DNA of 64,000 nucleotides, taken from Macrostomum lignano. Its lineage: Eukaryota. The stretch is taken from NCBI GenBank assembly GCA_002269645.1, contig NIVC01003261.1:1-64000 (forward strand), given 5' to 3'. Positions 1 to 31,900 of this stretch are shown here, in pieces (the stretch's first letter is position 1; every line of letters starts with the position of its first letter). Made by a program: the position numbers and the translations under genes. The notes below the pieces were generated by a model. It saw only the letters and a program-made list of their open reading frames with translations, ran no database searches and was not told the origin of the DNA.

Positions 1-3000
1 ACATTGTTGCCTTTGCATCGGCAGCTGTAGGCGACGCCTCTCGACATGATCTTGTAGTAATCCCCAGCCTTTATCCAATTGCCGTGCTTGTCCTTACAAC
101 CAGACGTATTCGAGTCTTCCTCCGTCGCCTCCGGTTGGCACTGGGTGTACTGCGGACCTTTAGCGCATACACAGATCCAAACTTTGCCGGCGTATAGCAC
201 TGTCACGGTGTCCCCGTAGTCAATGTACCTCCCACTACGATGATCCTTGCACTTATCCCGATTCACGTAGTCCTCCTCCGTCATGGCAGTTGCCATAGTT
301 GTTTGTGCCCTGGCACACGCAAATGTAAGGTTTTTGCCATCGGCTGTTCTCGCCACATTTTGTCCTTGAGATACGTATGTGCCATTGTCGTCCTTACACT
401 TGCCTCTGTTTTTTATGCTCTCCTCCGTCACGCATCCTCTATACTGATCGGTGCCAATACATTCGCAGACAAATACAGCACTTTTCTGATCGCACATTCG
501 TACGTTGTCCCCACTAGAATTCCCCGCCCACGTCCGTTGCACTGGTCCTGATGCATTAAGGACTCCTCTGTTACACAATCACTGTAGCCCATTTGGCCTT
601 TGCAGACGCACACGTATACCAAGTGCTCAACATTGACCTTTACTTCTGTCCCTTGTCGACATAGATACCATCGCTGCCTTGCACCTCTCACGATTAGCGT
701 AAGTCTCTTCAGTCATGCACTTGCCGTACTGATTGTGACCTTCGCATAAGCAGATGTACGCCTTGCCTCCATGCTCAACACGGACGGTTTGTCCCGGTGC
801 AGCATAGCTGCCGTCACTTGCTCGGCATTTGCCTTGGTTTTCAAAAGCCTCTTTGGTGACACAGTCGGCGTACCTGTTTTGTTCCTTTGCAACGACAAAC
901 GTAGATTTGATTATTGTACCGGTAATTTACTCGATCATCCTCTTCAACGTAGCTACCATCGATATCTCTGCATTTGTTCTTATTTCTCCAGACCTCCTCT
1001 TGCATGCACTGAACAAATTTGTTTGTACCGTTGCAAATGCATACATAGGTGTACTGGTCTTGCTTCACGACAACAGGCTCTCCCGCGTCCACGTACGACT
1101 CATTGTAAGCCTTTACAACGGCCATTGTTTTCAAATGCCTCTAATGTTTGGCAGTTCTTATAAGCATTATTGCCTCCGCAATTGCAAACGTAAATTTGAT
1201 TTTCGCGCTCAATTGAAACTTTTTCACCTTTCCAACGTAGTTACCATGAAGGTCACGGCACTTGTCCCTATTGTGATAAGTCTCGTTTGTCACACAATTC
1301 CTGACTCCGTCGCTACCGTTGCAAATGCAAACAAATACGTCTGCTCCGGACTTAACAACTACCATTTGACCTTCCTCGACGTAGTTTTCATCCATGCCAC
1401 GGCACTTGTGTCTGTTGTTGTACTGCGTCTCGGTCATGCAGTCCAGGTACCTATTTGTGCCGCCGCAGTTGCATACATACAAAGTCTCAGAGACGATGTG
1501 CCGAACAAGCTGGCCCTGCGGAACAAAGTGCCGTTTTTATCTTTGCATTTGCCTTGGTTTTTAACGCTCAACTCCGTCACGCAGCAGTTTCGGTACTGAT
1601 TAGAGCCGGCGCATTCGCATATGAAGATAATACTTTGTTTCTCGCACCGGACCGCACTTTCTCACCTCGTTTTGAATAGTTCTTACTAACAGCATCCTTG
1701 CACTGGTCCTTATGTAGCAGCGATTCTTCACTCACAGTCGCTATAACCCATTGCTCCCTTGCAGGTGCACACGTATGATTCCTGCTCTACTTCAACCTTT
1801 ACCTTCTCATCCAGAAGTACATATTCACCATCGCTACCAATGCAATTTTCTCTGTTCTCAAATTGATCTTCAGTGACGCATTGTTTGTAGAGATTCTCAC
1901 CTTCGCAATCGCAAACGTAGCGCCTTTTTCCGTGACGTATTCGGACCTTCTTTCCAGGTTCTACGTAATCTCCATCACGATCGCGGCACTTTCCGCGATT
2001 ATTGAAGACGTCCTGTGGAACGCAGTTAGCATACTTATTTGTTCCTTTGCAGTGGCAAACATAAATTTTGGCCCCTACTTGATGCTTGACGAGTTCATCT
2101 TCGCTAACATAAATTCCATCTATGTCTTTGCACTTATTTTGGTTGTTCCATGTCTCCTCGAGCATACATTGAATGTAATTATTCGTGCCATTGCAGATAC
2201 ACACAAAAATATAATTATCATGTTTTACAGCTACAGGCTCGCCAATATCTGTGTAAGATCCGTTGTGTCCTTTGCAACGGCCAGCGTTTTGAAATGCCTT
2301 ATTGTCTTACAGTTTTTGTAAGTGTTATTGCCGATGCAATCGCAGACATAGATGATTTCATTCTGCTCAATAGAGATCTTCTCGCCTTTTGGAAGGAAGT
2401 TTCCCTCCAGGTCCTTGCACATGCCTCGATGGTAGTAAGTTTCGTTGCTCATGCACTCGGCGATGCCTTTACTACCGCGTGGGCACTGGCAAATGTAGAC
2501 TTCGGTACCTGACAACACTCGACTGCTTCACCTCGGCCGACATACTTGCCGTCGACATCTCGACATCGGTCGCGATTCAAATATGCATCTTTTGATACAC
2601 AATCTTTGTACTTGTTTGTCCCGTTGCACTCGCAAACGTAGATGGTTCCTGACACCTTGTATTCTACAACCTCGCCTATTTCAACGTAGGAACCGTTAGC
2701 ACTCTGACATCTGTTGATATTGTCGAATATTTCTTTAGTCAAGCAGTTTTTATATCCTTGGCTGCCCATGCACTCACAGTAAAAAGTTGTATTTGTGGAG
2801 CTTTTAATTACCACAATCTGTCCCGCCTCTACGTAAGTATCGTTGTAGTTCTTGCATTTATCAGCGTTGACGATCGCGTTGTAGTCCTTGCATTGCTGGT
2901 ACCTGTTGGTTCCAATGCATTTACACTGATACAGGATGCTGTGGTGAAACACCACGACTTCTTTGCCTCTGTCAACATACTGCCCGTTTACGTCCTTGCA

Positions 3001-4852
3001 CTTGCCCTTGTTCATGTAAGCCTCCTCTGTCAAGCAGTTCTTGTAGCCTGCCGCTCCAGCGCAGTGGCAAACGTAGCTTATACCCTCGCTGACTATTCGT
3101 ACTTTGCGGCCCTTGGATACAAATTTTCCATCGGCACCTTTGCATTGATTTCGCGTGCTATAATCCTGCTCTGACTGGCAGTCCGAATAACCTGACGAGC
3201 CTTTACAGGTGCAAACAATCACGTTCTCGTTGTTGAGAATACGCACCAGTCGGCCGCGCTTAACATAGCCACCGCTAAGATCGATGCAGTCATCTCTGTG
3301 CGAAAAAGCCTGCTCCGTTAGGCAGCCCTCGTGTGTGTTCGTACCAGTGCAGTGGCAGACGAACACAGCACCGCCGCGAAGAATCCGAACGTAGCCGCCA
3401 GCCTTAACCAACCGGCCATGGTAGTCTTGGCAGCGGCCCCGGTACTTGTTCGCGTCCTCGTCTGCTAGGCGACATCCGGCGTGCTTGTTGGTACCGTTGC
3501 ACCGACAGATGTAATCATCGCCTTGAAATTCGATCCGTAATTCGCTGCCCTTGGTAACCCACTGGTGGTCCTTGCCCTGGCACATATCCTGATGGTCGTA
3601 CTCGGCCTGGGTCATGCAGTCAGAGTAACCGGAACTGCCGCGACAAGTGCAAATTAGAAATTCACCATTTTCACTTTGCGTAACAACCCGGTGACCAGAC
3701 TGGATGTAATGCCCATTGACGTCCAGGCATTTGTCAGCGTTACGAATCGACTCCAAAGTCGAACAGTTGCAATAATCCATGCGGCCGCCGCAGGTGCACT
3801 CAAACAATGTGCCGCTAAGCGACACGGTGACTCGCTCGCCGACGCTTTTGTACGTGCCGTCAACGTCCAGACATCGCTCTAGTGGGTACAGGACAGAAGT
3901 GATCATTAACGGACTCCATAACTCCGAAAGCGAAAAGGACATTGCTAGCAATTTTAAAGTTATGATATTTCGGAGTTGTGATTTTTCGGGTTTGTGATGC
4001 CCCCCTTCCCCAAAAAATTCTTACTGATGTTTGTAAAGACTAAAAAGCAAGTCATAGTTTGAAAATACCCTGGGAAGAAGTCAAGCAGAATACTTCCGCT
4101 GCAGTGAGCGAGACAACTAGGCAAGGAATACAGCCATTGAATTCTAATTGTGGTTCTACTTGATCACGGCAAAGATGCAATAAAGCGATGAGAAGAATGA
4201 TTCCAGAGTTTGAAATCCGAATTCTTCTTGCAAAGCTTGTTCGACTTCGACTTTGATGTCAGATGATAGTCTAGAGGCTAATTGTTGAAGCAGACAGAGT
4301 GGAAGCTGCAACGAGCTTTTATGATAACCCATAAGAGCTTAGAAGATACGGTACAGCTTAAAAGAGTGCTACTCACTGATAGTGCACTCAGTTCCGACAA
4401 GACTCTTGCCGTCTATCTCTCTCCGACAGATGCACTCGTGAACTCCTCGCGTTGTGTTCATTTCGTAGCGCGCATTCTCGTCCACGCATGTGCCCAGCGG
4501 ATGCAGACAGCCCTCTATGGATGAGGTTTAGTGAATAGAATTAGAGCAGTTCATAGGTAGAGCAGTTTTTAGTGAGCAGTTCATAGGTAGAGCATAGGTA
4601 GAGCAGTGAGCAGTTCATAGGTAGATACATGAAGATAATTCGTAGATACTCACTCGGCACACTCTTGCACATCTGCTGCAGGTTGGGATCGCAGACGCAG
4701 GTAATCTCGTGGCAGCCTTGAAGATACGTGTACGTGTCATTAACAGGAATCTGCACCCCGTCGAATGTGCAACGAATCGATGCGCCGTAAGATGAACCAG
4801 CCGTTAGGCAGATCAGGCCAATACAGAAGCTGACCGCCGCAGCTAACGCCAT
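1..4852 (-). CDS. Large secreted protein of tandem ~48-aa four-cysteine (FN1/VWC-N-like) modules; 3' end outside the window; frameshifted
   Basis: Exon 1 4852-4654: ATG, signal peptide MALAAAVSFCIGLICLTAGSSYG, donor GTGAGT, phase 1. Exon 2 4514-4377: one module, phase 1-1. Exon 3 runs from 3878 (acceptor ..CCACTAG) to the window edge with ~27 units of C-x5-6-Y/F-x2-3-G-x~13-C-x-C-x-G-x~6-C. The frame continues across ORFs 2449-3951, 2231-2518, 1728-2204, 1141-1482, 841-1134 and 428-691 through 1-2 nt indels. Confidence 0.85.
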
Positions 4853-13289: not shown

Positions 13290-16200
13290 TCAAAGCTTCG
13301 GCCGAGCACTCAAGGCTTCCCTATCCTCTGTGGAATCCTCATCTTTGATGGGCAAAGCTGGCCAGTCGCCCAAGCCCCGATGCCCGGCGGCGGGTTCCAG
13401 GGCAAAGCGCAGAGCCTGGTCCACAGTTTCCACGCAGTGCAGCCGCAGGCGGCCAGCCAGGCCGAGCCGCCCAGCCGTCCGAGTTGCTTCAATCCGATTG
13501 GCCATCGGCAGCACCACCGAGTGCAGGCCGGCCCGGGCGGCCGCCTCCAGCTTGGCCGGCACGCCGCCGATCGCCAGCACCCGGCCGCGGAGAGTCACCT
13601 CGCCAGTCAGGGCGACCCCGGCCCGGACTGGGGTGCCGCTGGCCAGGGAGGTCAGCGCCGCGGCCAACGGCAAACCGGCCGAGGTGCCGTCTTTTGGCAC
13701 AGCGCCAGACGGGAAGTGTACGTGCAGACGGCAGCGATTGCGACGGAGCTGGGAGTTGAGCCTGGAGCTGAGCCAGCTGATGCACAGAGTTACCGACTCG
13801 CGCATGACCTCGCCTACCTGCGGTATTGTGTAATGAGCGATTGGGATTGTGTAATGAGCGATTGGGATTGTGTAATGAGCGATTGGGATTGTGTAATGAA
13901 CAATTGGGAATTGTGTAATGAGCGATTGGGATTGTGTAATGACCGATTGGGATTGTGTAATGAGCGATTGGGATTGTGTAATGAGCGATTGGGATTGTGT
14001 AATGACCGATTGGGATTGTGTAATGACCGATTGGGATTGTGTAATGAGCGATTGGGCTTGTGTAATGAGCGATTGGGATTGTGTAATGAGCAATTGTGAT
14101 TGTGTAATGAGCAGCTGGGATTGTGTAATGAGCAATTGGGATTGTATAATGAGCAATTAGGATTGTGTAATGAGCAATTAGAATTGTGTAATGAGCAACT
14201 GGGATTGTGTAATAAGCAATTGGGATTGTGTAATGAGCAATTGGGGATATGGTGTAATGAGCATATGAGATTGTGTAATTAGTGATTAGGATTTGTAATA
14301 AGCACGTTTGATTGTACAATGAGCAAGTAGGATTCTGTAATGAGCAACTGGGATTGTGTAATGTAATAAATTTAATTTATGGAGTAAAAAAAGTTCTCCA
14401 CATCCAGCAGAGCTGTCACTCACCTGTCCGGTGCAGACTGGCGCCAAGTCCGTCGTCTGCCCGCCGCCATCGACAGCCGGCTCCAGTGTCCAGCCGCACT
14501 CTAACAGCAGGACTTCGCCGCCGTGAGGTGTCACGGCCAGCACCGGGCAGACGCCGGGCTCCAACGGCGCGCCGGAATTCGCCGCCGACATCGTCATCTG
14601 CTCGTACGGACTCGGCGTCGGCCGGCAATCGGCGCCGTCGGCCTCTTCGAATATTTGGCGCAGCACGTCGGCATCGACGCGTAGCGGCTCGCTAGGCGGG
14701 GCCTCCGCTGCCAGCAGGGCGGCGTGGCGGCACAGGCGGGCCAGCCGACGCTCCAGCTGGCGCACCCCGGCCTCCCGAGTGTAGGCGTCGATGACGCGCA
14801 ACAGTTCGGCTTCTCTTAGCAACACGGAGCCGGGCTCGAGACCGTGCTGGCTCAGCTGCTTTGGCAACAGGTGATCCGTGGCGATGCGGACCTGGAAGAC
14901 AGGGAGAGAGAGACAGGAAAAGTGAGCAATCTAAGCGCAAAAGGATTTACATAGACCCGCTTCGAAGTGTACATGAAGACAGCCTCTGGCAAAAGAGGGA
15001 ACATTACAGGCAGTACATACAGGGGGGCTGTGTGCACCCTGGTGCACTTTAAGCGACATTGTCACACAACCGGCGAGAGGCATTACTGCCCATTTCACCG
15101 ACTCCCCTGAGAAGGCGCCCACTCACACAGGAGTGTACAGCGGGCATAACTTTATTTAACGTTAGGCATGTACACTTCACTCTGTCTTGGCGGTTGGCTT
15201 TCAATGGCGTTGATTGCACGAGCAGACCCAAACGCCTTGTACCTGCACTTGGAATCGAGCCTGGGCCGCCGACACATAATACCGCCGCGCTAGACCACTG
15301 GGCTACGAGCTCTACGAACGCTGAAGGCACCCTACCCGCGAGTACAGCCACTCGGCGTTTCGTCGACTGCCTGCTGACGGACGCCCGCGCCCCGGATTCT
15401 GTCGGCGGAGCGGCACACTTATAGTGTACAGGAACGAGAGCTGCGGTCACTGCACTGCATATACGAATCTTGATGAAAGCGGTGCTTAGGCCAAGAAGCG
15501 TCTTTTTAAAATAGGAAAGAAGTGACTTTAAACGACTCTAAAACGACGAGATGTCGCGATGCAAGTCGCCAAAAAGTCGTCAAAGAGTCGCCCAAGAGTC
15601 ATTTTAAACTGTTTTATTGTATGCGTCTCTGAAACGACGCAAGTGACTCTGGGGCCGTCGAGTCCTACTTGAGTCGTGCTAGAGTCGCTGTAGAGTCGCT
15701 GAGTTGTGTTTGAAGCGCATTACGGCCACAGAGTCGTTATACCATCGTGCCAGAGTCACTTGCGTCTCTTGATGAATTAGAGTCACTTGCGTCTCTTGAT
15801 GAATTAGAGTCACATCTCTAGCGAAAGTTAAGTGCCAGCACAATGATTCTTGGACGACTCTTTTATGATTCTACAACTGACGTGACGCGCTCGTGACGCA
15901 AAAGTCGTCTTTTCGTCGCATTAGACGCGTTTGGTCGTTAAAAAGTCACAAAATCTGTCCCAGAGTCGCCAGAGTCACTAGAGATTTGTCTGCAACTTTT
16001 AAGCGAATCTTGTCACGGTATCGTCTTCAACGGGAAGCTACCGATTTTATAGACCGGCTCACGTTTGCGAAGCCGCAGTAAGTCAAAGCTGCCAGATATT
16101 GATGGCTATTGCTAGAAAATATTTCGGAGCTTCTTGCCTCATCAGTTCAGCTGGCAGTTGGTTTAGTCGTGAAGAGCAATTGGTACAAGGCCGTTATACT

Positions 16201-19200
16201 GAAGCTATAGGCCCTTGTAGGAGTATGGCTATGGGCTCTATACAAGCAGGTCTGATGCTCTGGTTGCACTGAAGATATGCAGAGATAACGCGCCTAGTGC
16301 AAAACCATGCTCAGCGAAACATTAAAACGGCAGACGGTTTTTCAGGCGCTACAGGCCAGCAGATGGACGTCGAGCGATAGAAAGATGGCTCGCAAGGTAA
16401 CCAAGGCTAAGCAGACGGTTTCTTCTCTGCAACCTCTGACAACTAGTAGTTCAGATTATTATGAAAGTCGAACGAGAGACGAGTTTCAATTCTGACGATG
16501 CAGCCCGTGTCGGATAGTCTTGCCGCTGGTTCTACTGATGTTGATTGTCAACGTCAACTTCAACAAGAGACTGGTTATACTTCGAATCTGGAGTTATCTT
16601 CTCCACTAGATAGATAGATTGGGCTCTAGCGCACACGCGCTCGCGAACACAGACGGGAGAGGCAGACGGCTGCGGTCAGGGGGCTGAGAACCAGAGCCTG
16701 CAAGTCAGCCACAAAACAGCCATTGGTCATGGTGCTTCCGCTCCGTTGCCTGGTTGCCTGGCTTCCAGCAGCGTAGCGGACGGGTCGCCGTGCATGCCGC
16801 GCCTGCCCAGCTTGTCCAGCTCGTCCAGCAGCAGCACCGGATCGCGGACCCCGGCCGCTCGAACAGCCGCCAACAAGCGGCCGGGCATGGCGCCTACGTA
16901 GGTCCGCCGATGGCCGCGCAGTTCGGCCGGGTCGGCCACGCCGCCTAGGGCGATGCGTTGCAGCGGCCGACCAAGACAGCGCGCGAGGCTGCCGGCCACG
17001 GAGGTCTTGCCGCAGCCGGGCGGGGCCACCAGGCACAGGAGCGGCGGACGGAGGCTCGGCCGGAGACGCCTGACGGCCAGGAACTGCAGGACTCGCTCCT
17101 TCACGCTAGCCAGGCCGTGGTGCTCGGCGTCGAGTAGGCGTCGAGCGTCGGCCATAGTGGCCGGGCCGGCGTCCGGTGGAGTGAGTCGGCGCCAGGGCAG
17201 TGCCAACAGCGTCTCCAAGTAGGTCTGGCGTTGGCAATAGCAAAATCAACGATAGACAGTAAAAAATTAAAATTCTTCTGCCAATGCTGAATTCAGGCTA
17301 TAAACTCAGGCTATTTGGTTTATATTACGGAATAGTGTAGCTTATCGAGAGAAATATCGCTTCACATTCTTTTCCTGCAGGTTTGCTCAGATGCTATGAG
17401 CCAAAGCTCATAGGGTATGCTGATATCCCAGGCTAAATGGCGGATGCTTTTTAGCTTTAAGAATCGTTTTCATTGAAAGATTAACGATAGTGACTGTGCA
17501 AGGTCAAAACCTACATACAGTTTATTTAGAAACTTTTACTCCTTTCTTTGTTGCCTCCCCAACAGCTGAAAGTAAGTGCATGCAATATTGCTTAACAACA
17601 GAATGCACCTGAATGACCCCGGCCTCCGGATGATGGTGCTGAGCGCCGCTAGTGATGGAGCGGAGTCTGGCCAATTCTCGATTGGCGGCTTCAGAAGCCG
17701 CCTTTGGCAGGTCGGCCGCGGCCAGGCGGCTCGCCAACTCGCCGATCGGACCGCCGCCGGCGCGGGGTGACGATGTCGGCAAGGACGAATTAGCGGCCGC
17801 TGCGTCGCCCGTCTTGTCGCGAAGTCGAGAGCGTAAAATCTGCGCGCAATGGAAGAATTTCCATTACAGATTGTGTCTTCACTGAGATTGTGTCTTCACT
17901 GAGATTGTATCTTCACTGAAATTGTGTCTTCACTGAGATTGTGTCTGTACTGAGATTGTGTCTTCACTGAGATTGTGTCTCACTGAGATTGTGTCTTCAC
18001 TGAGATTGTGTCTTCACTGAGATTGTGTCTTCACTGAGATTGTGTCTTCACTGAAATTGTGTCTTCACTGAGATTGTGTCTGTACTGAGATTGTGTCTTC
18101 ACTGAGATTGTGTCTTCACTGAGATTGTGTCTCACTGAGATTGTGTCTTCACTGAGATTGTGTCTTCACTGAGATTGTGTCTTCACTGAGATTGTATCTT
18201 CACTGAAATTGTGTCTTCACTGAGATTGTGTCTGTACTGAGATTGTGTCTTCACTGAGATTGTGTCTCACTGAGATTGTGTCTTCACTGAGATTGTGTCT
18301 TCACTGAGATTGTGTCTTCACTGAGATTGTGTCTTCACTGAAATTGTGTCTTCACTGAGATTGTGTCTGTACTGAGATTGTGTCTTCACTGAGATTGTGT
18401 CTTCACTGAGATTGTGTCTTCACTGAGATTGTGTCTTCACTGAGATTGTGTCTTCACTGAGATTGTGTCTCACTGAGATTGTGTCTTTACTGAAATTGTG
18501 TCTGTACTGAGATTGTCTCTCTGAGATTGGGTCTGTACTGAGATTGTGCCTGTACTGAGATTGGGTCTTCACTGAGATTGTGTCTCACTGAGATTGTGTT
18601 TCACTGAGATTGTGTCTCACTGAGATTGTGTCTTCACTGAGATTGTGTCTCACTGAGATTGTGTCTCACTGAGATTGTGTCTTCACTGAGATTGTGTCTT
18701 CACTGAGATTGTGTCTTCACTGAGATTGTGTCTTCACTGAGATTGTGTCTTCACTGAGATTGTGCCTCTATGATTAAAAGCATGATTTAAAAAAACGCGA
18801 AAACGCAGCTTACTGGAAGCAGAACTGCGGCCCTCTCTCGATGCGTTGTGGCCGCCAGTAGGCGCAAACGCTGCTCGGAGCTCAGCGACAACAGGCCGCC
18901 AAGAAGGTCGGGCAGCTGACTGGCCAGTCGCTTTCTCTCGCCATCTTTGATATCACTGGCGTCCTCGGCTGCAGCAGCAGCTTCCGAAGCGGCCGCGGCA
19001 GTAGGTGAAGCTCGAAGGACGCCAAGACGTTGACAGAGGCTGATCAGCTGGCGAAGCTCTTCAGCAGTGGCTTCCGCGTCCACTTCCTCGACGTCGCTAG
19101 TCAGCATGGCGACACGGGCGCGCCGGGGCGACTGCTGCTGCTGCGGCTGTTGCGACCAGAAAAACCTGCGGCCGACCTGCGTCGAATTCGAGCCGCTGAC

Positions 19201-21874: not shown

Positions 21875-23119
21875 CTACTCCAGCTTCCTAACGGTCACAT
21901 CGTACAGCACCTCCTCAATCTTGCGCATATCGTATTTGAGCCCGTCGTAGCGCCGGCGTAAAGCGTCATTCTTAAAGTTGAGCAGCCGGAAGCCGGCCTC
22001 CAGATGGCGGGCGAAGTCGGCAACTCGACGAGGCAGGTCGGGCCTGCCAGCCGTCACAGCGTTGACGCTCAGTCTGGCCAGTTCGCTGGCGAGGAGCAGC
22101 AGGCCGAACAGGTAGTCTTCCAGGTCCAGGTGGAGAGTGGACCCGCCGCCTGCGGTCGTGTGAAGGGAGACCAGACCAGGTTAAGCAGTTGGATGTGAAT
22201 GGCGTTTCACTATTGTAGCTGTAGCCTACTGGGCCCATGAGGGTCAACCCCCAATGCGCAGAGTGTACAGGTCTGACGATTAGAAAGTCGGGGCTGCTGT
22301 ACACCCTGTGTGAGCGTGTGCCTGCGATCTATGTACATCCATGTTCGCGCTCAGGGGTCAGGGGAATGGTAAAGCTACTAGGCTGGTAAACCCAACTGCT
22401 AAGCCACTAAGCTTGTGTCTAAACTAACTGCTAAGCCACTAAGCTTGTGTCTAACTAACTGCTATGCCACTAAGCTTGTGTCTAAACTAACTGCTAAGCC
22501 ACTAAGCTTGTGTCTAAACTAACTGCTAAGCCACTAAGCTTGTGTCTAAACTAACTGCTAAGCCACTAAGCTTGTGTCTAAACTAACTGCAAAGCCACTA
22601 AGCTTGCGTCAAAATCAATATATAAAAACTTAAAAGCTATATTAGAAAGGAATATATAATAATAAAAAATGTGCAATTATAGCTGGCCTCTTCCTTACCA
22701 CCATCACTATCTCCAGCCATGCCCAGCTGGCTCGCCGCATCCTCCAGACTCAGCAGCCGATCGGATTCCAAGAAGCTAATAAAAGTAACAGCCATGCAGA
22801 GCTGCTGAACCGGCTCCCTCCACAGCTGGTGATATTTGTAATAGGTTCCCGCTGGCATCTGCTGGCCCAGTTTAGCTAACAAATCAATGCTTGGCTGCAA
22901 AGCAGCTCGAGCTTCATCAATAGCCTTACTAATCGAATTGGTATCGCAGCTGCGGTGAATGCAGCGCAAAGCTTGAAGCGGCAACTGAGCCAATTTGGTC
23001 AGCTCAGCGGCTGTAGCTTTTACTGATTCTACTGTGGCCAAGTCAGCAGCTAATTGGTTGAGGTACAGCTGGAATTCGGCTTCAATGCCTGTGGCATTGG
23101 AATCTGTAGCTGGAGAAGC
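21875..23119 (-). CDS. TSN: Translin (C3PO subunit); start codon or first exon not located
   Basis: Exon 23119-22699 (YYKYHQLWR...FISFLE) and exon 22149-21875 (LHLDLEDYLFGLLLLASELARLSVNAVTAG...GFRLLNFKNDALRRRYDGLKYD), joined in phase 1. These motifs match translin rather than TRAX. Confidence 0.92.
22180..22610 (+). mobile_element. SINE-related fragment with a 32-bp tandem tail (AACTAACTGCTAAGCCACTAAGCTTGTGTCTA, ~7 copies) in the translin intron
   Basis: GCTGTACACCCTGTGTGAGCGTGTGCCTG and GCTCAGGGG match the core of SINE copy A. The tail array spans ~22392-22610. Confidence 0.55.
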
Positions 23120-25916
23120 CTGGAGTGTTTGCAATTTTTGTGAAGGCAAAAAAATCAATTTTCATTGATGAAAGTCAGGGACAAATTGGGTATTATAAAA
23201 TTCTATCAAAGCATTATACATAGCTAATATGCATATCCAAAAGAAATATTTATTTATTGTTTAATTAATTATATTGCTTCCTACATTAACTGAATACCAC
23301 TATTCATTCAGCATAGGTTTCAATATAAAATGACCATTAACCCTTTTTTACCAAAGGCAAAGTGTGTTTGTCACAAAAGCAACATATGTCACCAAAAAAA
23401 CTATTTGTCACTGAAACAAATTGTTACCAAAATGACCTTTACCTATGCTTGATTTATGCTTGATTTAGCTTGAAAGATTTGTCTCTAGCAAAAAGTCTAT
23501 CAGTTGGGTGGGTAGACTTAGTTGTTAATCAGTGTGAGGCAAATTCAGTAGACTTATAACTCAAACTATCATGCAATTTAATTATCTTAGTGTACTAACA
23601 AAACCATGGTTGGCCTCCACTTGCACCTACAACCATTGTATATTATTGATTTTTTATCTTGACTATAGGATTAGGTTGATATAAATGCAGTTTCTTATAT
23701 CAAATTATTTTTTGTAAAATTATTATAGTGATATTAATATATTGTAGAGCAGTATTGTGGATTATTAAATGTTATAAAGTTCAAAAAGTGTCTTTAGCAT
23801 TGATAGTAACATTGTATCCAATACAGGATGTTTCCAAATTGGTTCTTTAGAAAACACCTTGCCATATAAATTTGCCAAAGGTGAGCCTCAAAAAATTATT
23901 ACTTGCTTTAGATATGCAATTTCTAGATCCCACAGTTTAGTTGGCATGCTTGGGTGCAACCTAGGGATTCACCTAACCATTTTTATTGGCAACACATAAA
24001 AGTTGCTATTGAATTAAATAATAGTCATGTGACTGCTTTTAGCCACTAGCAACTTACATGCATATATTTCTAATGTAGAAGAAATAGCTGAGTGATTCCC
24101 AAGGTTATACATGTCTATTAGTTGCCTATTAAGGATCATTGATTATAATTATTGTTGTCAGTGCAAAGTGGATATCTAGTCTTTGAATTGTATTGCATTG
24201 CGGTTGAAATAAGTGCAAATTTAAGTAAGAAATAATTATTTAATATAGAAAATTACATTTATCTATTTTTTTTCATTGACAATTGACAATTGATCTGTTG
24301 AAACTCAATCTTTCTATTGAATCTATTATAATATTATCATTAAACTAAACAGAAACAACAAATTTAAAGAAGATAATGCACAAAAGTAAAAGATTGCCAT
24401 TATCTAGAAATTAATATAGATTCAATTTAAAATACCTATAAAATTTTTAATTAAAAATAGATTGATTAAAATACCAATATTCTATATACAATTTAAATAC
24501 CACTTTGTTATCAAAGTCAACTGTTACCTGGAGGGGGTGGGACAGCTATGCCCCTTAGGCAGAGATTAGAAAAAAATCAAAAGAGAGACCAAGCAAATAT
24601 TCACCAATATATAGAGCCACCTTGTTTAACCCCTTCCTCTTCTTAGGTTTTTACCTTCTGAGATCTACCCTCCCCCCTTCTTAACAAATTAATGATTGTA
24701 CTATTGCAAGTAACAATTTTAACAACTAAGGCCTAATAAAATAAATAGAAAAGAACATGGCCTTGTATAACTTACAACCTAAAAATCTTAACTTCCATTA
24801 ATGGCAAAATTGTTAGCATTAAAACAAAAAATCTTAACTTATTACCTATTAATTTTGTTAAGTTAGGTGAAAGTTAACTGATAATCATTAATAAGCATTA
24901 ATCTGTTAAGGTTAACACAGAAAATATAGAAATCTTACATTTTTTCAAAACAGATTATATAATTATAATGCATTGTCTTTGCTTTTCCATCTTTTTAGTG
25001 AAACACAAAGGTCACAAAGCAATAAAATTTACCATTTTTATTCATTATTAAAGTTCATTAGGCCTAGTAAGAAGTAGTTACATTTGCATGATCATTATCA
25101 TAAACAAAAATATTAATTCGGCATTTAGGTAAATTCAAATACATTTGTGTAATGTTGTAACTTCTCTTCAGACTTATATTTTGTTCTTTATTTGCATCTT
25201 TGCCATCGTTGGTCATCGACATTGCCATTAACATTAACAGTGAATTTGTTGTTAACTCACAAAATTTTGAATGCAAATTCGTTAATCCGTTATTTTAAAA
25301 AATCTTAATGGAATAATGGCAGTCCATTGTTGTTAATGAAAATCTTAACGTTTATTAACGGATTAACGCTAATTAACGAACTGGTGCCCAACACTGCCAA
25401 TATATATATAGCCTCACACACAGAAACACTAAACCAAAAAATTAAGTTTTGAATCATGGATCTTAGAATCACGAAACATAGACATCTACTTAATAAATCC
25501 TGTAAAAATACTAAGGTCAAAACATTTAAATTTAGGAGACAAAAAGTTAAACATCGTGAAATGGTTCTGTTTTGGTGTCAGAAAAATAAAAAGGCCAAAT
25601 TTTAATAGGCCTAGGTAAAAGCGGATCTAAATTTTAAATTATAAATCGCACGCTTAATCTTGTTTGTATTTTGCCAATATTCTTAGAAGTGATAGTTCAA
25701 ACAAAGTATACTATACTTTTTATGTATATTGTCAACTTCCTTGCCTGAAAGGTTAAAGTATTTGATTTTTGTAGTATTTTTAAGAGGCGAACACAATAAT
25801 TGTTAATTTTTTAATTTTAAGCTTTTTGTGCTGCTGTTAAATTTTGTTTTTCCTGGCTTTTTTATTTCTCAATTTTCAGCTTTTTATCAAACTCCGGCAG
25901 CGGAATTTAGTTAGCA

Positions 25917-28900
25917 ATGGCTGTAGTCGGAACTAATGAATATTTCCCGCCACAAAGCCCAAACTTTATGTACCACAATGCAGCTGATTTTGCTATGTCG
26001 CTTACAGGCAGTGGATTTTGTAAGTCGTCTTGCTACTTCTCTAACTTTTGTACCTAATTAGGCTGTTACTTCTTGTTCTTAATCTTACTTCTCTTTGTTT
26101 CGATGCAATAGTTAGGCCTAATTTTTCCGATAGGGATATGTGTAATACTAATAGTTAGAGATTTTTCAAATAATTTACAATAAATAGGTTCACATTGGCT
26201 GCAAACGACCATTATTTTAAGTAGATCTTTCCTTATATGTAGTCCTTGCTATGTAAGTGTGCCTTTGTCTCACTTACGAGCTCTGACTCATCACCTGTGA
26301 AAAAACCCTCATTATCATAGTATCAACAAATCAACTGCAAAACTTCAACGCGCCGCCTCCGACGCCGCCTGGCGCGGGCAACTCCGGCTCCTCGGGCGCC
26401 GGCTCCGGCTATGGCGGCGGCAGCGACTCCGGCGAGCCGTCCCCACCGTCGATCATTTTCCAGCCGCCGGCGCGTCCGGGCCGCGGTCAGGAGGGTCGGC
26501 ACATCAGCCTGCGGGCCAACCACTTCGAAATTCGCTTGCCGAAAGGCTTTCTGCATCACTACGACGTGAACATTACGCCGGACAAATGCCCCCGACGAGT
26601 GAACCGCGAGATCATCAACACAATGGTGAACTCCATGCACCATCAGACTGTGTTCTTCAACCAGCGCCCCGTGTTCGACGGTCGCAAGAATCTGTACACC
26701 CGGGACCCGCTGCCGTTTGGCACGGATCGTCTGGAACTGGAGGTGACCCTGCCGGGCGAGGGCAGCAGCAAGGACCGGGTGTTCCGCGTGTCGCTGAAGT
26801 ATCTCGGCGAGGTCTCGCTGTTCGCCCTTGAAGAGGCTCTCGAAGGCCGTCGCCGGAACATCCCGGCGGATGCTGTGAACGCATTGGACGTGATCATGCG
26901 CCACCTGCCCAGCCTGCAGTACACCCCAGTTGGCCGGTCATTCTTCCAGCAGCCCGACCAGGACTCCACCGACCACCCGCTGGGCAACGGTCGCGAAGTT
27001 TGGTTCGGCTTCCACCAGAGCGTGCGGCCCAGCCACTGGAAGATGATGCTCAACATCGACGTGTCTGCCACCGCCTTCTACAAGGCGCAGAGTGTCTGCG
27101 ATTTTCTGCGCGACGTGCTCGAACTGCCAGATCTAGAAGAGTTTGATAGGCGACCTTTGAGCGACTGCAATCGGGTGAAGTTCACCAAAGAGATTAAAGG
27201 TCTGAAGGTGGAGATCACTCACTGCGGCCAGATGCGGCGCAAGTACCGGGTCTGCAATGTGACGCGCAGGTCGGCTAGCGCGCAGAGCTTTCCATTGCAG
27301 ATGGAGAATGGCCAAACTGTTGATTGCACTGTTGCCAAGTACTTTGCCGAGAGGTACCGCATGCGACTGCGCTATCCGATGCTGCCCTGTCTGCAGGTGA
27401 GCTGAAATTCACTGGATTGATATGAGCAGATAGAGCACGAGAATTGCCCCTTGCCCTTCTGTAGCTGGCGCCTTGCCCTTCTGTAGCTGGCGCCTTGCCC
27501 TTCTGTAGCTGGCGCCTTGCCCTTCTGCAGCTGGCGCCTTGGCCTTCTGTAGCTGGCGCCTTACCCTTCTGTAGCTGGCGCCTTGCCCTTCTGTAGCTGG
27601 CGCCTTACCCTTCCGCAGCTGGCGCCTTGCCCTTCTGCAGCTGGCGCCTTGCCCTTCTGTAGCTGGCGCCTTACCCTTCCGCAGCTGGCGCCTTGCCCTT
27701 CTGCAGCTGGCGCCTTACCCTTCCGCAGCTGGCGCCTTGCCCTTCTGCAGCTGGCGCCTTGCCGTTCTGCAGCTGGCGCCTTACCCTTCCGCAGCTGGCG
27801 CCTTGCCCTTCTGCAGCTGGCGCCTTGCCCTTCCGCAGCTGGCGCCTTGCCCTTCCGCAGCTGGCGCCTTGCCCTTCTGCAGCTAGCTCCCCTTTGTAGC
27901 TGGCGCCTTGCCCTTCTGCAGCTGGCGCCTTGCCCTTCTGTAGCTGGCGCCTTACCCTTCCGCAGCTGGCGCCTTGCCCTTCTGCAGCTGGCGCCTTACC
28001 CTTCCGCAGCTGGCGCCTTGCCCTTCTGCAGCTGGCGCCTTGCCGTTCTGCAGCTGGCGCCTTACCCTTCCGCAGCTGGCGCCTTGCCCTTCTGCAGCTG
28101 GCGCCTTGCCCTTTCGCAGCTGGCGCCTTGCCCTTCCGCAGCTGGCGCCTTGCCCTTCTGCAGCTAGCTCCCCTTTGTAGCTGGCGCCTTGCCCTTCTGC
28201 AGCTGGCGCCTTGCCCTTCTGCAGCTAGCTCCCCTTTGTAGCTGGCGCGCTCCCCTTTGTAGCTGGCGCCTTGCCCTTCTGTAGCTGACGCCTTGCCCTT
28301 CTGCAGCTGGCGCCTTGCCCTTCTGTAGCTGACGCCTTGCCCTTCTGCAGCTGGGGCCTTACCCTTCTGCAGCTGGCGCCTTACCCTTCTGCAGCTGGCG
28401 CCTTACCCTTCTGCAGCTGGCGCCTTGCCCTTCCGCAGCTGGCGCCTTGCCCTTCTGCAGCTAGCTCCCCTTTGTAGCTGGCGCCTTGCCCTTCTGCAGC
28501 TGGCGCCTTGCCCTTCTGTAGCTGGCGCCTTACCCTTCCGCAGCTGGCGCCTTGCCCTTCTGCAGCTGGCGCCTTACCCTTCCGCAGCTGGCGCCTTGCC
28601 CTTCTGCAGCTGGCGCCTTGCCGTTCTGCAGCTGGCGCCTTACCCTTCCGCAGCTGGCGCCTTGCCCTTCTGCAGCTGGCGCCTTGCCCTTTCGCAGCTG
28701 GCGCCTTGCCCTTCCGCAGCTGGCGCCTTGCCCTTCTGCAGCTAGCTCCCCTTTGTAGCTGGCGCCTTGCCCTTCTGCAGCTGGCGCCTTGCCCTTCTGC
28801 AGCTAGCTCCCCTTTGTAGCTGGCGCGCTCCCCTTTGTAGCTGGCGCCTTGCCCTTCTGTAGCTGACGCCTTGCCCTTCTGCAGCTGGCGCCTTGCCCTT

Positions 28901-31900
28901 CTGTAGCTGACGCCTTGCCCTTCTGCAGCTGGGGCCTTACCCTTCTGCAGCTGGCGCCTTACCCTTCTGCAGCTGGCGCCTTACCCTTCTGCAGCTGGCG
29001 CCTTGCCCTTCTGCAGCTGGCGCCTTACCCTTCTGCAGCTAGCTCCCCTTTGTAGCTGGCGCTCTTTTGTAGCTCGGGTTCCATTGAAAGGATAAATTAA
29101 AATCTACAAAGTCTATAAGGTATAAATTGGCTCAAAACATCATGCACTACACTCATACAGGTTGGCCAAGAGAACAAGCACACCTACCTGCCATTGGAGG
29201 TGTGCAACATTGTCAGCGGGCAGCGCTGCATCAAGAAGCTGACGGATTCGCAGACTTCAACGATGATTAAAGCTACGGCTAGGTCGGCTCCGGACCGAGA
29301 ACGCGAGATCAATAATTTGGTTAGGAAGGCCAACTTTAGTCACGATAATCATCTGCAAACGTTTGGCATACAGGTATGTTTCTTTTTCTAGAAATTTGCA
29401 TGAATATGAGCTAAGATTTTAGTTACTTTGGAGGGTCATTGCTTTTGGATTTAAGAGGGCCCGCTGTTGGGCCCTATGTACTCCACTCTGATCCTTTTTT
29501 AGATAGAGGCAGGGGGCTGTGTGCTATAGTTACTCCAGCCGTTTACTTAAAAATACGTGAATTTTTTCTTAGTTTTCTTTCATAAGTAAGTCACATGGCC
29601 TGTGAAAATCAGGGGAGGATTGCGTGAGTATGATTGTATAAATAGTTTCACAAAAAATCTGTGCACATTTGTCCAGGTCCAGACCCGCATGGCCGACATC
29701 GGTGGCCGGGTCCTACCGGCACCAAAGATCCAATACGGCGGCCGCACCCGGGCCCAGGCGCTGCCCCAGCAGGGGGTTTGGGACATGCGCGGCAAGCAGT
29801 TCTTTGCCGGCATCGAGATCAAAGTCTGGGCCATCGCCTGTTTCGCCGCCCAGCGCACGGTGCGCGAGGACTCGCTGAGGCAGTTCACCCAGCAGCTGCA
29901 GCGGATCAGCCAGGATGCCGGCATGGCCATCACCGGTCAGCCCTGCTTCTGCAAGTACGCCAACGGCCAGGACCAGGTGGAGCCGATGTTCCGCTATCTG
30001 AAGAATATGTTTCACGGACTGCAGCTCATTGTGGTGGTGCTGCCCGGCAAGACTCCGGTTAGTGGCTTATTAAGCAATTATTTTGTTTGTGTTATTTACT
30101 CTTATCTTCAAGCCACTTTTTGTACACGTGTCCCAAATTAAAGTAGCTATGGCTACACAATGCTGCGGCTCCAGAGACCGCTGACTGATTGACTGACTGA
30201 ATGACTGACTGACTGACTGACTGACTGACTGACTGACTGACTGACTGACTGACTGACTGACTGAATTTATTCCCTAAATGTCTGCCCAATTAACATTATC
30301 ACCCTCCTCGCCCCTCCTCGCAGGTGTACGCCGAGGTGAAGCGAGTGGGGGACATCATGTTCGGCCTGGCCACCCAGTGCGTGCAGGCTCGCAACGTTAA
30401 TAAAACATCGCCGCAGACGCTGAGCAACCTCTGCCTGAAGATCAACGTCAAGCTCGGCGGCATCAACTCCATCCTGGTGCCGGGCGTTCGTCCGCCAGTG
30501 TTTCGTGAGCCGGTCATCTTCCTTGGCGGCGACGTGACGCATCCGCCAGCCGGAGACCGAACCAAGCCCTCCATCGCAGCCGTGGTTGCCAGCATGGACG
30601 CCCATCCCAGCCGTTATGCCGCCAGCGTTCGAGTTCAAGGCCATCGTGAAGAGAAGATCACCGAACTGTGCACCATGGTCCGGGAATTGCTGTTGCACTT
30701 TTATCGCAGCACCCGGTTCAAGCCTACTAGGATTGTGTACTATCGAGACGGCGTTAGCGAAGGCCAGTTCCAAGCTGTTCAGTCCCATGAGCTTCGGGCA
30801 CTGCGCGAGGCCTGCACCAGGCTGGAGCTGGGCTACCAGCCCGGCATAACCTTCATCGCCGTGCAGAAGCGCCATCACACTCGCCTGTTCTGCGCCGACG
30901 CCAAGGACAAGACTGGCCGCAGCGGCAACATCCCGGCTGGCACCACCGTTGATCAGACGATTACTCATCCCACCGAGTTCGACTTCTATCTGTGCAGCCA
31001 CGCTGGCATTCAGGCAAGTCTTCTGTTGCTGTGCTTAGCAACGGCTTTTGTTTGCCTTAGTTACGGCTGTTAAAACCTGTCTTTCTCATCTTAGCAATGA
31101 ATTTTGTTTACCTTAGTTACGTTTTTTAAATGTGTCTTCCTCATCTTAGCAACGGCTTTTGTTTACCTTAGTTACGACTGTTTAAATCTGTCTTCTATCT
31201 TAACAACGAACTTTGTTTACCTTAGTTACGGCTGCTTAAATATGTCTTTCTCATCTTAGCAATGAATTTTGTTTACCTTAGTTACGTTTTTTAAATGTGT
31301 CTTCCTCATCTTAGCAACGGCTTTTGTTTACCTTAGTTACGACTGTTTAAATCGTCTTCTATCTTAACAACGAACTTTGTTTACCTTAGTTACGGCTGCT
31401 TAAATCTGTCTTCCTCATCTTAGCAATGAATTTTGTTTACCTTAGTTGCGTTTTTTACATGTGTCTTCCTCATCTTAGCAACGGCCTTTGTTTACCTTAG
31501 TTACGAATGTTTAAATCTGTCTTCTATCTCAGCAACGAATTTTGTTTACCTTAGTTGGTGTTTTCTATCTTACCAAAGTATTTTGTTTACCCTAGTTACG
31601 ACTGTTAAAATCTGTGTTTTCCATCTTAGAAACGACTTTTGTTTATCTTAGTTACATCTCAATTTATTAATCTTTATGTCGGCAACGTATCAAGCTGCAT
31701 TGTCTAATTACCATAGTTACGTCACTTAACAGCGGATGTAACTACAATAATCTCCATAGCAACCGTGTGTGTAATAAAAACGAATCCCCAACCCGAACCT
31801 GCAGGGCACCAGCCGGCCATCGCACTATCACGTATTGTGGGACGACAACAAGTTCTCAGCCGATGAGCTGCAGGTGCTGACCTACCAGCTGTGTCATACC

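What the first reader, a model, noticed from the sequence alone, without database searches (positions are those of the whole stretch)
1..4852. Giant secreted protein built from ~29 divergent four-cysteine FN1-like modules
Seen: a signal peptide, two phase-1 single-module exons, and one large exon with ~27 tandem ~48-aa units (C-x6-Y-x3-G...C-x-C-x-G-x6-C), many carrying NGT/NGS sequons. The units are highly diverged from each other but the Cys framework is kept, which implies old, selected repeats rather than a minisatellite. Known: this spacing resembles fibronectin type I and the N-subdomain of VWC, and canonical FN1 is usually regarded as chordate-associated. Here the FN1 core Trp is replaced by Val/Ile. 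Inference: an undescribed invertebrate bead-on-a-string extracellular protein (adhesive, mucus, eggshell or ligand trap). I do not recognise the gene.
Basis: partly seen in the sequence, partly recalled or inferred. Interest (0 to 1): 0.75.

Follow-up and report, generated by a model that had tools for sequence, protein, structure and literature searches.

The report
Flatworm giant secreted FN1-like repeat protein
The window starts inside an unannotated gene of the flatworm Macrostomum lignano that encodes a secreted protein of at least 29 small four-cysteine modules predicted to fold like fibronectin type I modules, a fold so far regarded as specific to deuterostomes.

Summary
On the minus strand, from 4852 to 1, lie a signal peptide, two single-module exons bounded by phase-1 introns, and one large exon holding 27 tandem 48-aa units, each with four cysteines. 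The gene is cut by the start of contig NIVC01003261.1 of the M. lignano Mlig_3_7 assembly.

- **Frameshifts.** All 13 fall in the terminal 2.5 kb of the contig. The corrected reading path has no stop codon and no lost cysteine. The duplicated blocks differ far less at non-synonymous than at synonymous sites (pN 0.28, pS about 0.86). The shifts are therefore most likely PacBio consensus errors, not decay.
- **Fold.** AlphaFold2 models are confident (pLDDT 91-94). In both Foldseek searches of the PDB the leading hits are all fibronectin type I modules.
- **Sequence.** The evidence here is weak. Pfam fn1 stays below its threshold. hhalign gives probability 56% and P = 1e-4.
- **Relatives.** An exhaustive HMM search of 1.84 billion proteins finds only one relative, the 290-aa M. 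lignano hypothetical protein Mlig026500. It has the same exon plan, and its ortholog in another sample is transcribed.

My verdict is a Macrostomum-restricted family of FN1-fold modular secreted glycoproteins, of which this is an expanded member without a gene model. Its physiological role is unknown. A matrix or adhesive scaffold is my inference. Homology to FN1 versus convergence is unresolved.

The parts
4784..4852 (-). Start codon and predicted signal peptide (MALAAAVSFCIGLICLTAGSSYG, cleavage before ASIRC)
   Evidence: Sequence reading. Cleavage site inferred from the -3/-1 rule; no predictor was run. The paralogs P0001 and P0010 have an equivalent hydrophobic N-terminus followed by A-[AS]-[VI]-T-C.
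4654..4852 (-). Exon 1 (199 nt): signal peptide plus head module 1 with five Cys. Ends at the donor A|GTGAGT, phase 1.
   Evidence: Mlig026500g2 has the same boundary and donor motif.
4515..4653 (-). Intron 1 (139 nt), containing a 16-bp tandem repeat
   Evidence: GT...AG boundaries. Tandem repeat at 4542-4605.
4377..4514 (-). Exon 2 (138 nt, phase 1-1): head module 2 with five Cys
   Evidence: Collinear with exon 2 of Mlig026500.
3879..4376 (-). Intron 2 (498 nt)
   Evidence: Donor A|GTGAGTAG and acceptor cccactAG.
2521..3878 (-). Exon 3, frameshift-free part: modules 3-11 and the start of module 12
   Evidence: Continuous frame. Modules 6-8 were modelled at pLDDT 93.6.
1..2520 (-). Exon 3, part with 13 frame changes: rest of module 12 to module 29, which is cut by the contig start. 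No stop codon lies in the corrected path.
   Evidence: Frameshift-aware alignment. Frame changes at about 2520, 2302, 1733, 1657, 1529, 1233, 1108, 879, 674, 645, 532, 329 and 285.
1405..2419 (-). Super-repeat block A (modules 13-19)
   Evidence: 50-67% identity to modules 21-27 at offset 8, against about 34% background.
252..1260 (-). Super-repeat block B (modules 21-27), an old duplicate of block A
   Evidence: pN 0.28 against pS about 0.86 between the blocks.

Best explanation
This is the 5' portion of a real, unannotated Macrostomum lignano gene for a large secreted glycoprotein. The portion covers the promoter-proximal exons and at least 27 modules of a very large third exon.

Predicted: a signal peptide sends the protein into the secretory pathway.

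Predicted with high model confidence: each 48-aa unit folds as a fibronectin-type-I-like mini-domain. It has a short N-terminal hairpin and a three-stranded antiparallel sheet. An 8-10-residue helical linker (x-T-E-E-x-[FY]-x-N-R-x-K) follows, which canonical FN1 arrays lack.

Inferred by analogy with FN1: the four invariant cysteines form the 1-3 and 2-4 disulfides.

Inferred:
- The array is an extended string of beads, protease-resistant and N-glycosylated, with sequon hot spots at unit columns 5 and 29.
- It serves as an extracellular scaffold or binding surface in matrix, mucus or a gland secretion. It probably engages partners by beta-strand addition along exposed sheet edges, as FN1 modules do.
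- The two head modules each carry a fifth cysteine, conserved in the paralog. These may pair with each other or cross-link molecules.

Shown:
- The gene is an expanded paralog of the 6-module Mlig026500 gene. The array grew by unit duplication and by at least one 7-module block duplication.
- The block duplication was followed by long purifying selection.

Most likely: the 13 frame changes are consensus errors at the poorly supported end of a Canu PacBio contig.
For: - **Organism and position.** The window equals bases 1-64000 of NIVC01003261.1, M. lignano Mlig_3_7.
- **Gene structure.** Signal peptide, GT-AG phase-1 introns and 29 modules.
- **Paralog.** Mlig026500g2 has the same three-exon plan and the same A|GTGAGT donors. 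The collinear BLASTP match reaches E = 8e-28 and includes the extra Cys of modules 1 and 2.
- **Splice plan.** It is confirmed by the intronless 964-nt transcript contig L002, which encodes P0010 at 73% identity.
- **Selection.** dN/dS is 0.27 between P0001 and P0010. Between blocks 13-19 and 21-27, pN is 0.28 and pS is about 0.86, which is saturated.
- **Fold.** AF2 pLDDT is 93.6 for three modules and 91.3 for one. Foldseek against the PDB: the first 18 matches of the three-module model are all fibronectin FN1 modules, E from 3.6e-6, probability 0.69-1.00. The first 13 matches of the single-module model are also all FN1 modules, with TM 0.45-0.55 and rmsd 2.9-3.9 A over about 40 of 48 residues.
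- **Register.** Weak in-register sequence matches to FN1.
- **Frameshifts as errors.** All 13 lie in the terminal 2,520 nt of the contig, and none in the next 1,358 nt of the same exon or in the 2.7-kb TTLL ORF. The corrected path has zero stops, where about 39 would be expected over roughly 840 codons of random sequence. All 68 framework Cys are kept. The assembly is Canu on PacBio reads polished with Pilon (PMC5730564).
Against: - No transcript, read or protein evidence for this particular gene could be reached.
- Its 3' end is off the contig.
- The structure is a prediction by a network trained on FN1 structures.
- Disulfide connectivity was not inspected.
- Pfam fn1 is not reached (best 17.5 bits against a cut-off of 27, in 1 of 27 modules).
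- hhalign against FN1 gives only 56% probability. Its score is reached by 1 of 60 column-shuffled controls.
- The functional role rests on analogy only.
Confidence: 0.7

Rival explanations
1. The locus is a pseudogene or a truncated gene. The frameshifts are real. The product either stops at window 2449 (589 aa, about 11.3 modules) or is not made at all. Modules 12-29 are a decaying tail of a redundant copy in this partly polyploid genome.
For: There are 13 frame changes in 2.5 kb. The first one creates a stop at 2449. No protein model for the gene exists in any source. The DV1 genome carries many duplicated genes, for example four copies of Mlig026500.
Against: - No nonsense codon and no lost framework Cys accompany the 13 indels. 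Under neutral decay, substitutions would outnumber indels several-fold and would have produced some.
- The indels cluster at the contig end. If they fell uniformly over exon 3, the chance that all 13 landed in the last 2,520 nt is about 0.004 (own arithmetic).
- Nine of the 13 are single missing bases, the usual PacBio consensus error.
- Blocks lying inside this region show pN far below pS.
Confidence: 0.15
2. The modules are not relatives of fibronectin type I. They are an independently evolved (convergent) four-cysteine beta-hairpin module, or a derivative of another ancient cysteine-rich module such as the FN1-like N-subdomain of VWC. The FN1 resemblance would then be structural analogy only.
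For: - Pfam fn1 and VWC are not reached.
- The exhaustive profile search finds no FN1-bearing protein at E <= 0.001.
- hhalign is marginal.
- The FN1 core Trp is absent, and a helical linker is added.
- FN-I is reported as deuterostome-specific (PMC3002383).
- Small disulfide-rich folds converge readily (general knowledge).
Against: - The alignments to FN1 are in register over G6, Y8, G12, C-x-C-x-G and C4, at 20-27% identity.
- No VWC, EGF or other cysteine-rich fold appears among the top 50 structural matches.
- The head modules sit in phase 1-1 exons. From memory, vertebrate FN1 modules do too.
Confidence: 0.4
3. The array at the contig end is an assembly artefact. Reads from several paralogous arrays would have been collapsed or joined in a chimera, so that the order and number of modules are not those of any real gene.
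For: The region lies at the very end of a contig in a genome described as hard to assemble because of repeats (PMC5730564). The consensus there is error-prone.
Against: Modules are only 19-67% identical in protein, and the duplicated blocks are about 61% identical in DNA. That is far too diverged to confuse a long-read assembler. The frame and the module register continue without a break across the whole exon.
Confidence: 0.05

Closest known systems
Fibronectin type I (FN1/FnI, 'finger') modules of vertebrate fibronectin, tPA, factor XII and HGFA (Pfam PF00039)
   Same: - Module core of about 38 aa with four Cys spaced C-x25-C-x-C-x8-C.
- Conserved Gly and Tyr early in the module, and G after C-x-C.
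- Predicted hairpin plus three-stranded sheet.
- Best, and essentially only, structural matches in the PDB.
- Tandem arrays in a secreted protein.
- Phase-1 boundaries for the two head modules.
   Different: - Below the Pfam threshold.
- The core Trp is replaced by Val or Ile.
- Each unit carries an extra 8-10-residue helical linker, giving a 48-aa period.
- 27 or more units lie in one exon.
- No FN2, FN3, kringle or protease partner domains.
- The host is a protostome (flatworm), outside the reported deuterostome range (PMC3002383).
Macrostomum lignano Mlig026500 (PAA82805.1 and three further copies; UniProt A0A1I8G6R0, auto-named 'EGF-like domain-containing protein')
   Same: The same family. 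It has a signal peptide, the same two five-Cys head modules in exons 1 and 2, the same phase-1 introns and donor motif, and then an exon of canonical modules.
   Different: Only 4 array modules (290 aa) against 27 or more here. About 25% identity. It is annotated, whereas the window gene has no model.
VWC / chordin-like cysteine-rich domains (N-terminal subdomain described as FN1-like)
   Same: A small secreted cysteine-rich beta module with a C-x-C element. It is pan-metazoan, so it is a conceivable source.
   Different: VWC has ten Cys with C-x2-C-x-C and C-C-x2-C motifs. Here there are four Cys per unit. There is no Pfam VWC hit and no VWC structure among the top 50 matches.
[quoted passage not shown]
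   Same: Large, cysteine-rich, repetitive, glycosylated secreted proteins of the same animal that lack outside homologs. They are encoded by very large genes that are hard to assemble (PMC6410801, PMC9229212).
   Different: ap1 has Lys/Arg-rich flanks plus C-lectin, vWD, C8, TIL and EGF domains. ap2 has vWD, TIL, LDLa, 255-aa and 221-aa repeats and TSP1 domains. They lie on scaf1170 and scaf3366. None of these features occurs here.

Membership tests
Fibronectin type I domain (PF00039) | Four conserved Cys in a C1...C2-x-C3...C4 framework within about 40 residues | tested here: met
   All 27 array modules keep C1, C26, C28 and C37.
Fibronectin type I domain (PF00039) | Fold: two-stranded sheet packed on a three-stranded antiparallel sheet | tested here: met
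   AF2 pLDDT 91-94 with strands at residues 2, 8, 14-19, 22-30 and 33-39. Leading Foldseek PDB matches are all FN1 modules, with single-module TM up to 0.58 and rmsd 2.5 A to 1qgb. This is a prediction, not an experiment.
Fibronectin type I domain (PF00039) | Disulfides C1-C3 and C2-C4 | not testable with these tools
   Model coordinates are not exposed. The pairing is inferred from the in-register alignment to FN1.
Fibronectin type I domain (PF00039) | Score at or above the Pfam gathering threshold (27 bits) | tested here: not met
   No hit on the 500-aa ORF even at E <= 10. One of 27 modules reaches 17.5 bits, E = 0.0048.
Fibronectin type I domain (PF00039) | Significant profile-profile similarity to FN1 modules | tested here: inconclusive
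   hhalign of A1 against 11 PDB-verified FN1 modules gives probability 55.6%, P = 1.2e-4, 29 columns in register. One of 60 column-shuffled controls reaches the score. hmmsearch of the PDB puts fibronectin 1F1-2F1 third, at E = 1.1.
Fibronectin type I domain (PF00039) | Conserved core Trp after the G-[DE]-x motif | tested here: not met
   The aligned column is Val or Ile in nearly all modules.
Fibronectin type I domain (PF00039) | Taxonomic range (reported as deuterostome-specific) | tested here: not met
   The host is the platyhelminth M. lignano. The range statement is in PMC3002383.
VWC domain (PF00093) | Ten Cys with C-x2-C-x-C and C-C-x2-C motifs, and a Pfam match | tested here: not met
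   Four Cys per unit. No VWC hit at E <= 10. No VWC among the top 50 structural matches.
EGF-like domain | Six Cys paired 1-3, 2-4 and 5-6, and a Pfam or fold match | tested here: not met
   Four Cys per unit. There is only one sub-threshold hit, to an EGF-like model (16.8 bits). The precomputed Pfam entry for P0001 is empty. No EGF structure is among the top matches.
Mlig026500-type family (Macrostomum-restricted, unnamed) | Signal peptide, two five-Cys head modules in separate phase-1 exons, then an exon of 48-aa four-Cys modules | tested here: met
   The profile of the window modules hits P0001 at E = 1.7e-34.
Mlig-ap1 / Mlig-ap2 adhesive proteins | Published domain architectures and scaffolds | tested here: not met
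   Compared with the published description. No shared domains or repeat lengths.

The most novel reading that the evidence does not exclude
The FN1 'finger' module is not a deuterostome or chordate invention. A true, highly diverged homolog survives in a basal flatworm lineage as a small gene family. One member was amplified to at least 29 modules and forms a new kind of extracellular filament. This would place the origin of the FN1 module at or before the bilaterian ancestor. Alternatively, it would document a striking independent re-invention of the same fold and cysteine framework.
Probability: 0.35. Interest if true: 0.7.

Novelty: new variant of a known kind. Interest (0 to 1): 0.55.

Why it matters
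FN1 modules are textbook examples of late, deuterostome- or chordate-specific inventions of the extracellular matrix. A confidently predicted FN1-fold module family in a platyhelminth is invisible to Pfam and absent from every other proteome searched. It therefore bears on when and how often this module arose.

It also adds an unannotated large secreted protein to the gene set of a flatworm model that is used for adhesion, regeneration and reproduction research, and in which in situ hybridisation, RNAi and transgenesis are routine.

Practically, it shows that long module arrays at contig ends of the Mlig_3_7 assembly escaped annotation because of indel errors.

Tried and rejected
- **Pfam scans.** I scanned the 500-aa ORF, a 158-aa ORF and the exon 1 ORF, and each module alone. 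There was no family above threshold.
- **Word-indexed homology search** with the 500-aa ORF. Nothing was found.
- **Rfam** on the window. Nothing was found.
- **Tandem Repeats Finder.** No 144-nt array, because the units are too diverged.
- **PDB sequence profile search.** Nothing significant.
- **Literature.** A search for 'Mlig026500' in papers and in the supplements of the genome paper gave no mention. A search for the Logan run SRR28338165 also gave no mention, so the species of P0010 is unknown.
- **First structure job.** Two re-alignments came out of register and were dropped in favour of A5.
- **Identity with Mlig-ap1 or Mlig-ap2.** Rejected on architecture.
- **VWC and EGF readings.** Rejected; see the membership table.
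- **Two search hits.** P0004 is a CDGSH-repeat protein and P0005 a bacterial beta-propeller repeat protein. Both are composition or pattern hits, not relatives.

No base was restored anywhere. Frameshift sites were marked X and the pieces were analysed apart.
Full report
**Where the window comes from.** An exact look-up of the 892-aa TTLL protein encoded at 35479-38157 (minus strand) places the window on NCBI contig NIVC01003261.1 of assembly GCA_002269645.1. Window coordinates equal contig coordinates, so base 1 of the window is base 1 of the 108,650-bp contig. NIVC00000000 is the Mlig_3_7 assembly of the free-living flatworm Macrostomum lignano. It was built with Canu from PacBio reads and polished with Pilon (PMC5730564). 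The other genes in the window are ordinary eukaryotic genes, separated by many micro- and minisatellites. They are Lon protease, translin, Argonaute, TTLL, a Tc1/mariner-type transposase and a CBM21 phosphatase regulator.

**The observation.** The feature lies on the minus strand.
- Exon 1 (4852-4654, 199 nt) opens with a signal-peptide-like sequence, MALAAAVSFCIGLICLTAGSSYG. It continues with a five-cysteine module and ends at the donor A|GTGAGT in phase 1.
- Exon 2 (4514-4377, 138 nt) is a phase 1-1 exon that encodes a second five-cysteine module.
- Exon 3 begins at 3878 behind a cactAG acceptor.
- A frameshift-aware alignment of the DNA to a cyclic profile of the units finds 27 consecutive units in exon 3. 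The last is cut by the contig start.
- The unit is 48 aa. Its consensus is C-x-D-x2-G-x-Y-V-x2-G-x2-V-x8-Y-V-C-x-C-x-G-x-N-x-Y-x2-C-x-T-E-E-x3-N-x3.
- The motif C-x-C-x-G/A-x(4-9)-C occurs 24 times here. It occurs twice in the remaining 60 kb of the strand.
- The partial protein has at least 1,411 residues, 8.7% Cys and 20 N-x-S/T sequons. Among the 17 sequons that fall on profile columns of the exon 3 modules, columns 5 and 29 carry five each.

**The frameshifts.** The stretch 2449-3951 is one open frame of 500 codons. Downstream of 2520 the reading path changes frame 13 times. Four observations argue that these are consensus errors and not decay.
1. The corrected path of about 840 codons has no stop, where random sequence would give about 39. 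All 68 framework cysteines are kept.
2. All 13 changes fall in the terminal 2,520 nt of the contig. None falls in the next 1,358 nt of the same exon. If they were spread evenly over the exon, the chance of this is about 0.004 (my arithmetic). The 2.7-kb TTLL ORF in the same window is also intact.
3. Nine of the 13 behave as one missing base, the typical residual error of PacBio consensus.
4. Two module blocks that lie inside this region differ at 28% of non-synonymous sites but at saturated synonymous sites, with pS about 0.86. The region therefore evolved under purifying selection for a long time.

I did not restore any base. Shift sites were marked X and the pieces were used separately. Reads were not available, so a recent pseudogene cannot be excluded. 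I give it 0.15.

**Internal history of the array.**
- Modules are typically about 34% identical to one another.
- At an offset of eight modules the identities rise: 13~21 is 63%, 14~22 is 67%, 15~23 is 56%, 16~24 is 50%, 17~25 is 64%, 18~26 is 50% and 19~27 is 53%.
- A block of seven modules was therefore duplicated once, long ago. The blocks are 61% identical in DNA.
- The array thus grew both unit by unit and by block duplication.
- An extra cysteine in modules 18 and 26 is shared by the two copies.

**Relatives.**
- Pfam gives nothing above threshold.
- The word-indexed search finds nothing.
- An exhaustive hmmsearch with the 27-module profile against 1.84 billion representative proteins returns five hits. 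Two are spurious pattern matches. Three are one M. lignano gene.
- That gene is Mlig026500 (PAA82805.1). It is 290 aa, a 'hypothetical protein' present in four copies. UniProt automatically labels it 'EGF-like domain-containing', and it has no precomputed Pfam domain.
- It has a signal peptide and six modules.
- Its genomic locus (L003) has the same plan as the window gene. Exon 1 carries the signal peptide and module 1, exon 2 carries module 2, and exon 3 carries all remaining modules. Every intron is in phase 1, behind the same A|GTGAGT donor.
- The N-terminal 261 residues of the window protein align collinearly with it at E = 8e-28. The alignment includes the fifth cysteine of each head module.
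- A 73%-identical ortholog, P0010, comes from an intronless 964-nt contig of a Logan run. This is a spliced transcript and it confirms the splice plan.
- dN/dS between the two is 0.27.

The window gene itself has no protein model in any source searched. Within what I could search, the family is restricted to Macrostomum.

**Fold.**
- I modelled modules 6-8 with an in-register alignment of 18 three-module strings, 16 from the window and 2 from the paralogs. Mean pLDDT was 93.6.
- One module modelled with the 27-module alignment gave pLDDT 91.3.
- Each unit shows two short strands, three longer antiparallel strands (14-19, 22-30, 33-39) and a short helix in the linker.
- Foldseek against the PDB with the three-module model returns fibronectin type I module pairs or triplets as all of its first 18 matches. 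E values run from 3.6e-6 to 5e-2 and probabilities from 0.69 to 1.00, at 11-24% identity.
- The single-module model returns FN1 modules as its first 13 matches. TM-scores are 0.45-0.55 normalised to the 48-residue query, and rmsd is 2.9-3.9 A over about 40 columns. Individual E values are not significant for so short a query.
- Further down the same list, the N-terminal fibronectin pair 1qgb reaches TM 0.58, and the factor XII FnI module 4bdw reaches TM 0.56.
- No VWC, EGF or other cysteine-rich fold appears in the top 50 of either search.

**Sequence-level relation to FN1.**
- The PDB profile search puts fibronectin 1F1-2F1 third, at a non-significant E of 1.1. Both modules are aligned in register.
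- One truncated module reaches 17.5 bits on Pfam fn1, against a cut-off of 27.
The printed alignments show the nine fibronectin modules and the tPA finger identical to wild-type PDB chains. The FXII FnI alignment was not printed, but it matches 4bdw at 95.8 bits over 46 residues. I then aligned all eleven.
- hhalign of the module profile against the FN1 alignment gives probability 55.6%, P = 1.2e-4 and 29 columns in register. G6, Y8, G12 and C-x-C-x-G coincide, and Val15 sits on the FN1 Trp.
- In column-shuffled controls the score is reached once in 60, both with all columns shuffled and with the Cys columns held fixed.

The sequence evidence is suggestive but not decisive. Family membership by sequence is not shown, and homology versus convergence stays open.

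**What it most likely is and does.** It is a secreted, N-glycosylated string of at least 29 FN1-fold beads, each stabilised by two disulfides and joined by short helical linkers.
- By analogy with FN1 arrays, such a string should be elongated. FN1 arrays bind fibrin, collagen and bacterial peptides by adding a strand to the exposed sheet edge (established knowledge of fibronectin).
- It should also present a repeated binding edge.
- The head modules, each with an odd cysteine, could cross-link molecules.
- I therefore favour an extracellular scaffold or adhesive component of matrix, mucus or a gland secretion. That last step is inference.
- It is not one of the two known M. lignano adhesive proteins, whose architectures are different (PMC6410801).

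**Comparison and novelty.** The closest known kind is the FN1 module.
- The differences are the missing core Trp, the added helical linker and 48-aa period, the single giant exon, the absence of any partner domain, the failure of the Pfam model, and a protostome host.
- The FN-I domain has been described as deuterostome-specific (PMC3002383).
- I rate it a new variant of a known kind.

A specialist in matrix evolution would find it surprising. The lack of expression data and the unresolved homology keep the score moderate, at 0.55.

Noticed in passing
window 1 (contig start): The window begins at base 1 of contig NIVC01003261.1. The FN1-like gene is therefore truncated by the assembly, and its 3' exon or exons lie elsewhere or are unassembled. 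By analogy with Mlig026500, at least a short terminal exon is missing.
   Followed up: partly
window 1405-2419 and 252-1260 (minus strand): A higher-order repeat inside the array. Modules 13-19 and 21-27 are pairwise 50-67% identical (background about 34%), with saturated synonymous divergence.
   Followed up: yes
window 4542-4605: A 16-bp tandem repeat (about 3.4 copies) lies inside intron 1 of the gene. The introns of the paralog Mlig026500g2 (L003 6270-6540 and 6900-7370) are likewise filled with minisatellites.
   Followed up: no
window 41029-42153 (minus strand): An intact 374-aa ORF for a Tc1/mariner-type transposase (DDE_3 plus HTH domains). It may belong to a recently active element.
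   Followed up: partly
window 26536-31073 (plus strand): Exons of an Argonaute-family gene (ArgoN, L1, PAZ, Mid, Piwi domains).
   Followed up: partly
window 13290-17218 (minus strand): Exons of a Lon protease gene (AAA, Lon_lid, Lon_C), interrupted by long minisatellites that create spurious ORFs of several hundred codons on both strands.
   Followed up: partly
window 35479-38157 (minus), 45232-46395 (plus), 22637-23158 (minus): A single-exon tubulin-tyrosine-ligase-like gene (892 aa, annotated at NCBI), a CBM21 glycogen-targeting phosphatase regulator-like gene, and a translin-like exon.
   Followed up: partly
window about 18.8-20.3k, 21.1-21.8k, 27.6-28.2k, 33.8-34.4k, 38.5-39.7k, 47.2-48.1k, 49.2-50.4k, 52.9-55.9k, 60.0-60.6k: Very dense micro- and minisatellite arrays produce open frames of 150-500 codons on both strands. 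This is a large share of the window and a likely cause of the fragmented assembly.
   Followed up: no
window 24001-26000: A sharp AT-rich trough (GC 0.29 against 0.41-0.64 elsewhere).
   Followed up: no
L003 6040-6100: The annotated Mlig026500 protein starts M-S-R. The genome reads ...GTG TCC CGC... there, with an in-frame ATG 10 codons upstream. The annotated start may come from a trans-spliced leader or from an annotation convention.
   Followed up: no
P0002, P0003, P0009, P0011 (UniProt/MetaClust models of M. lignano): Several older gene models of Mlig026500 are frame-shifted or fused to unrelated sequence (up to 1,703 aa). This illustrates the indel problems of the earlier assembly.
   Followed up: partly
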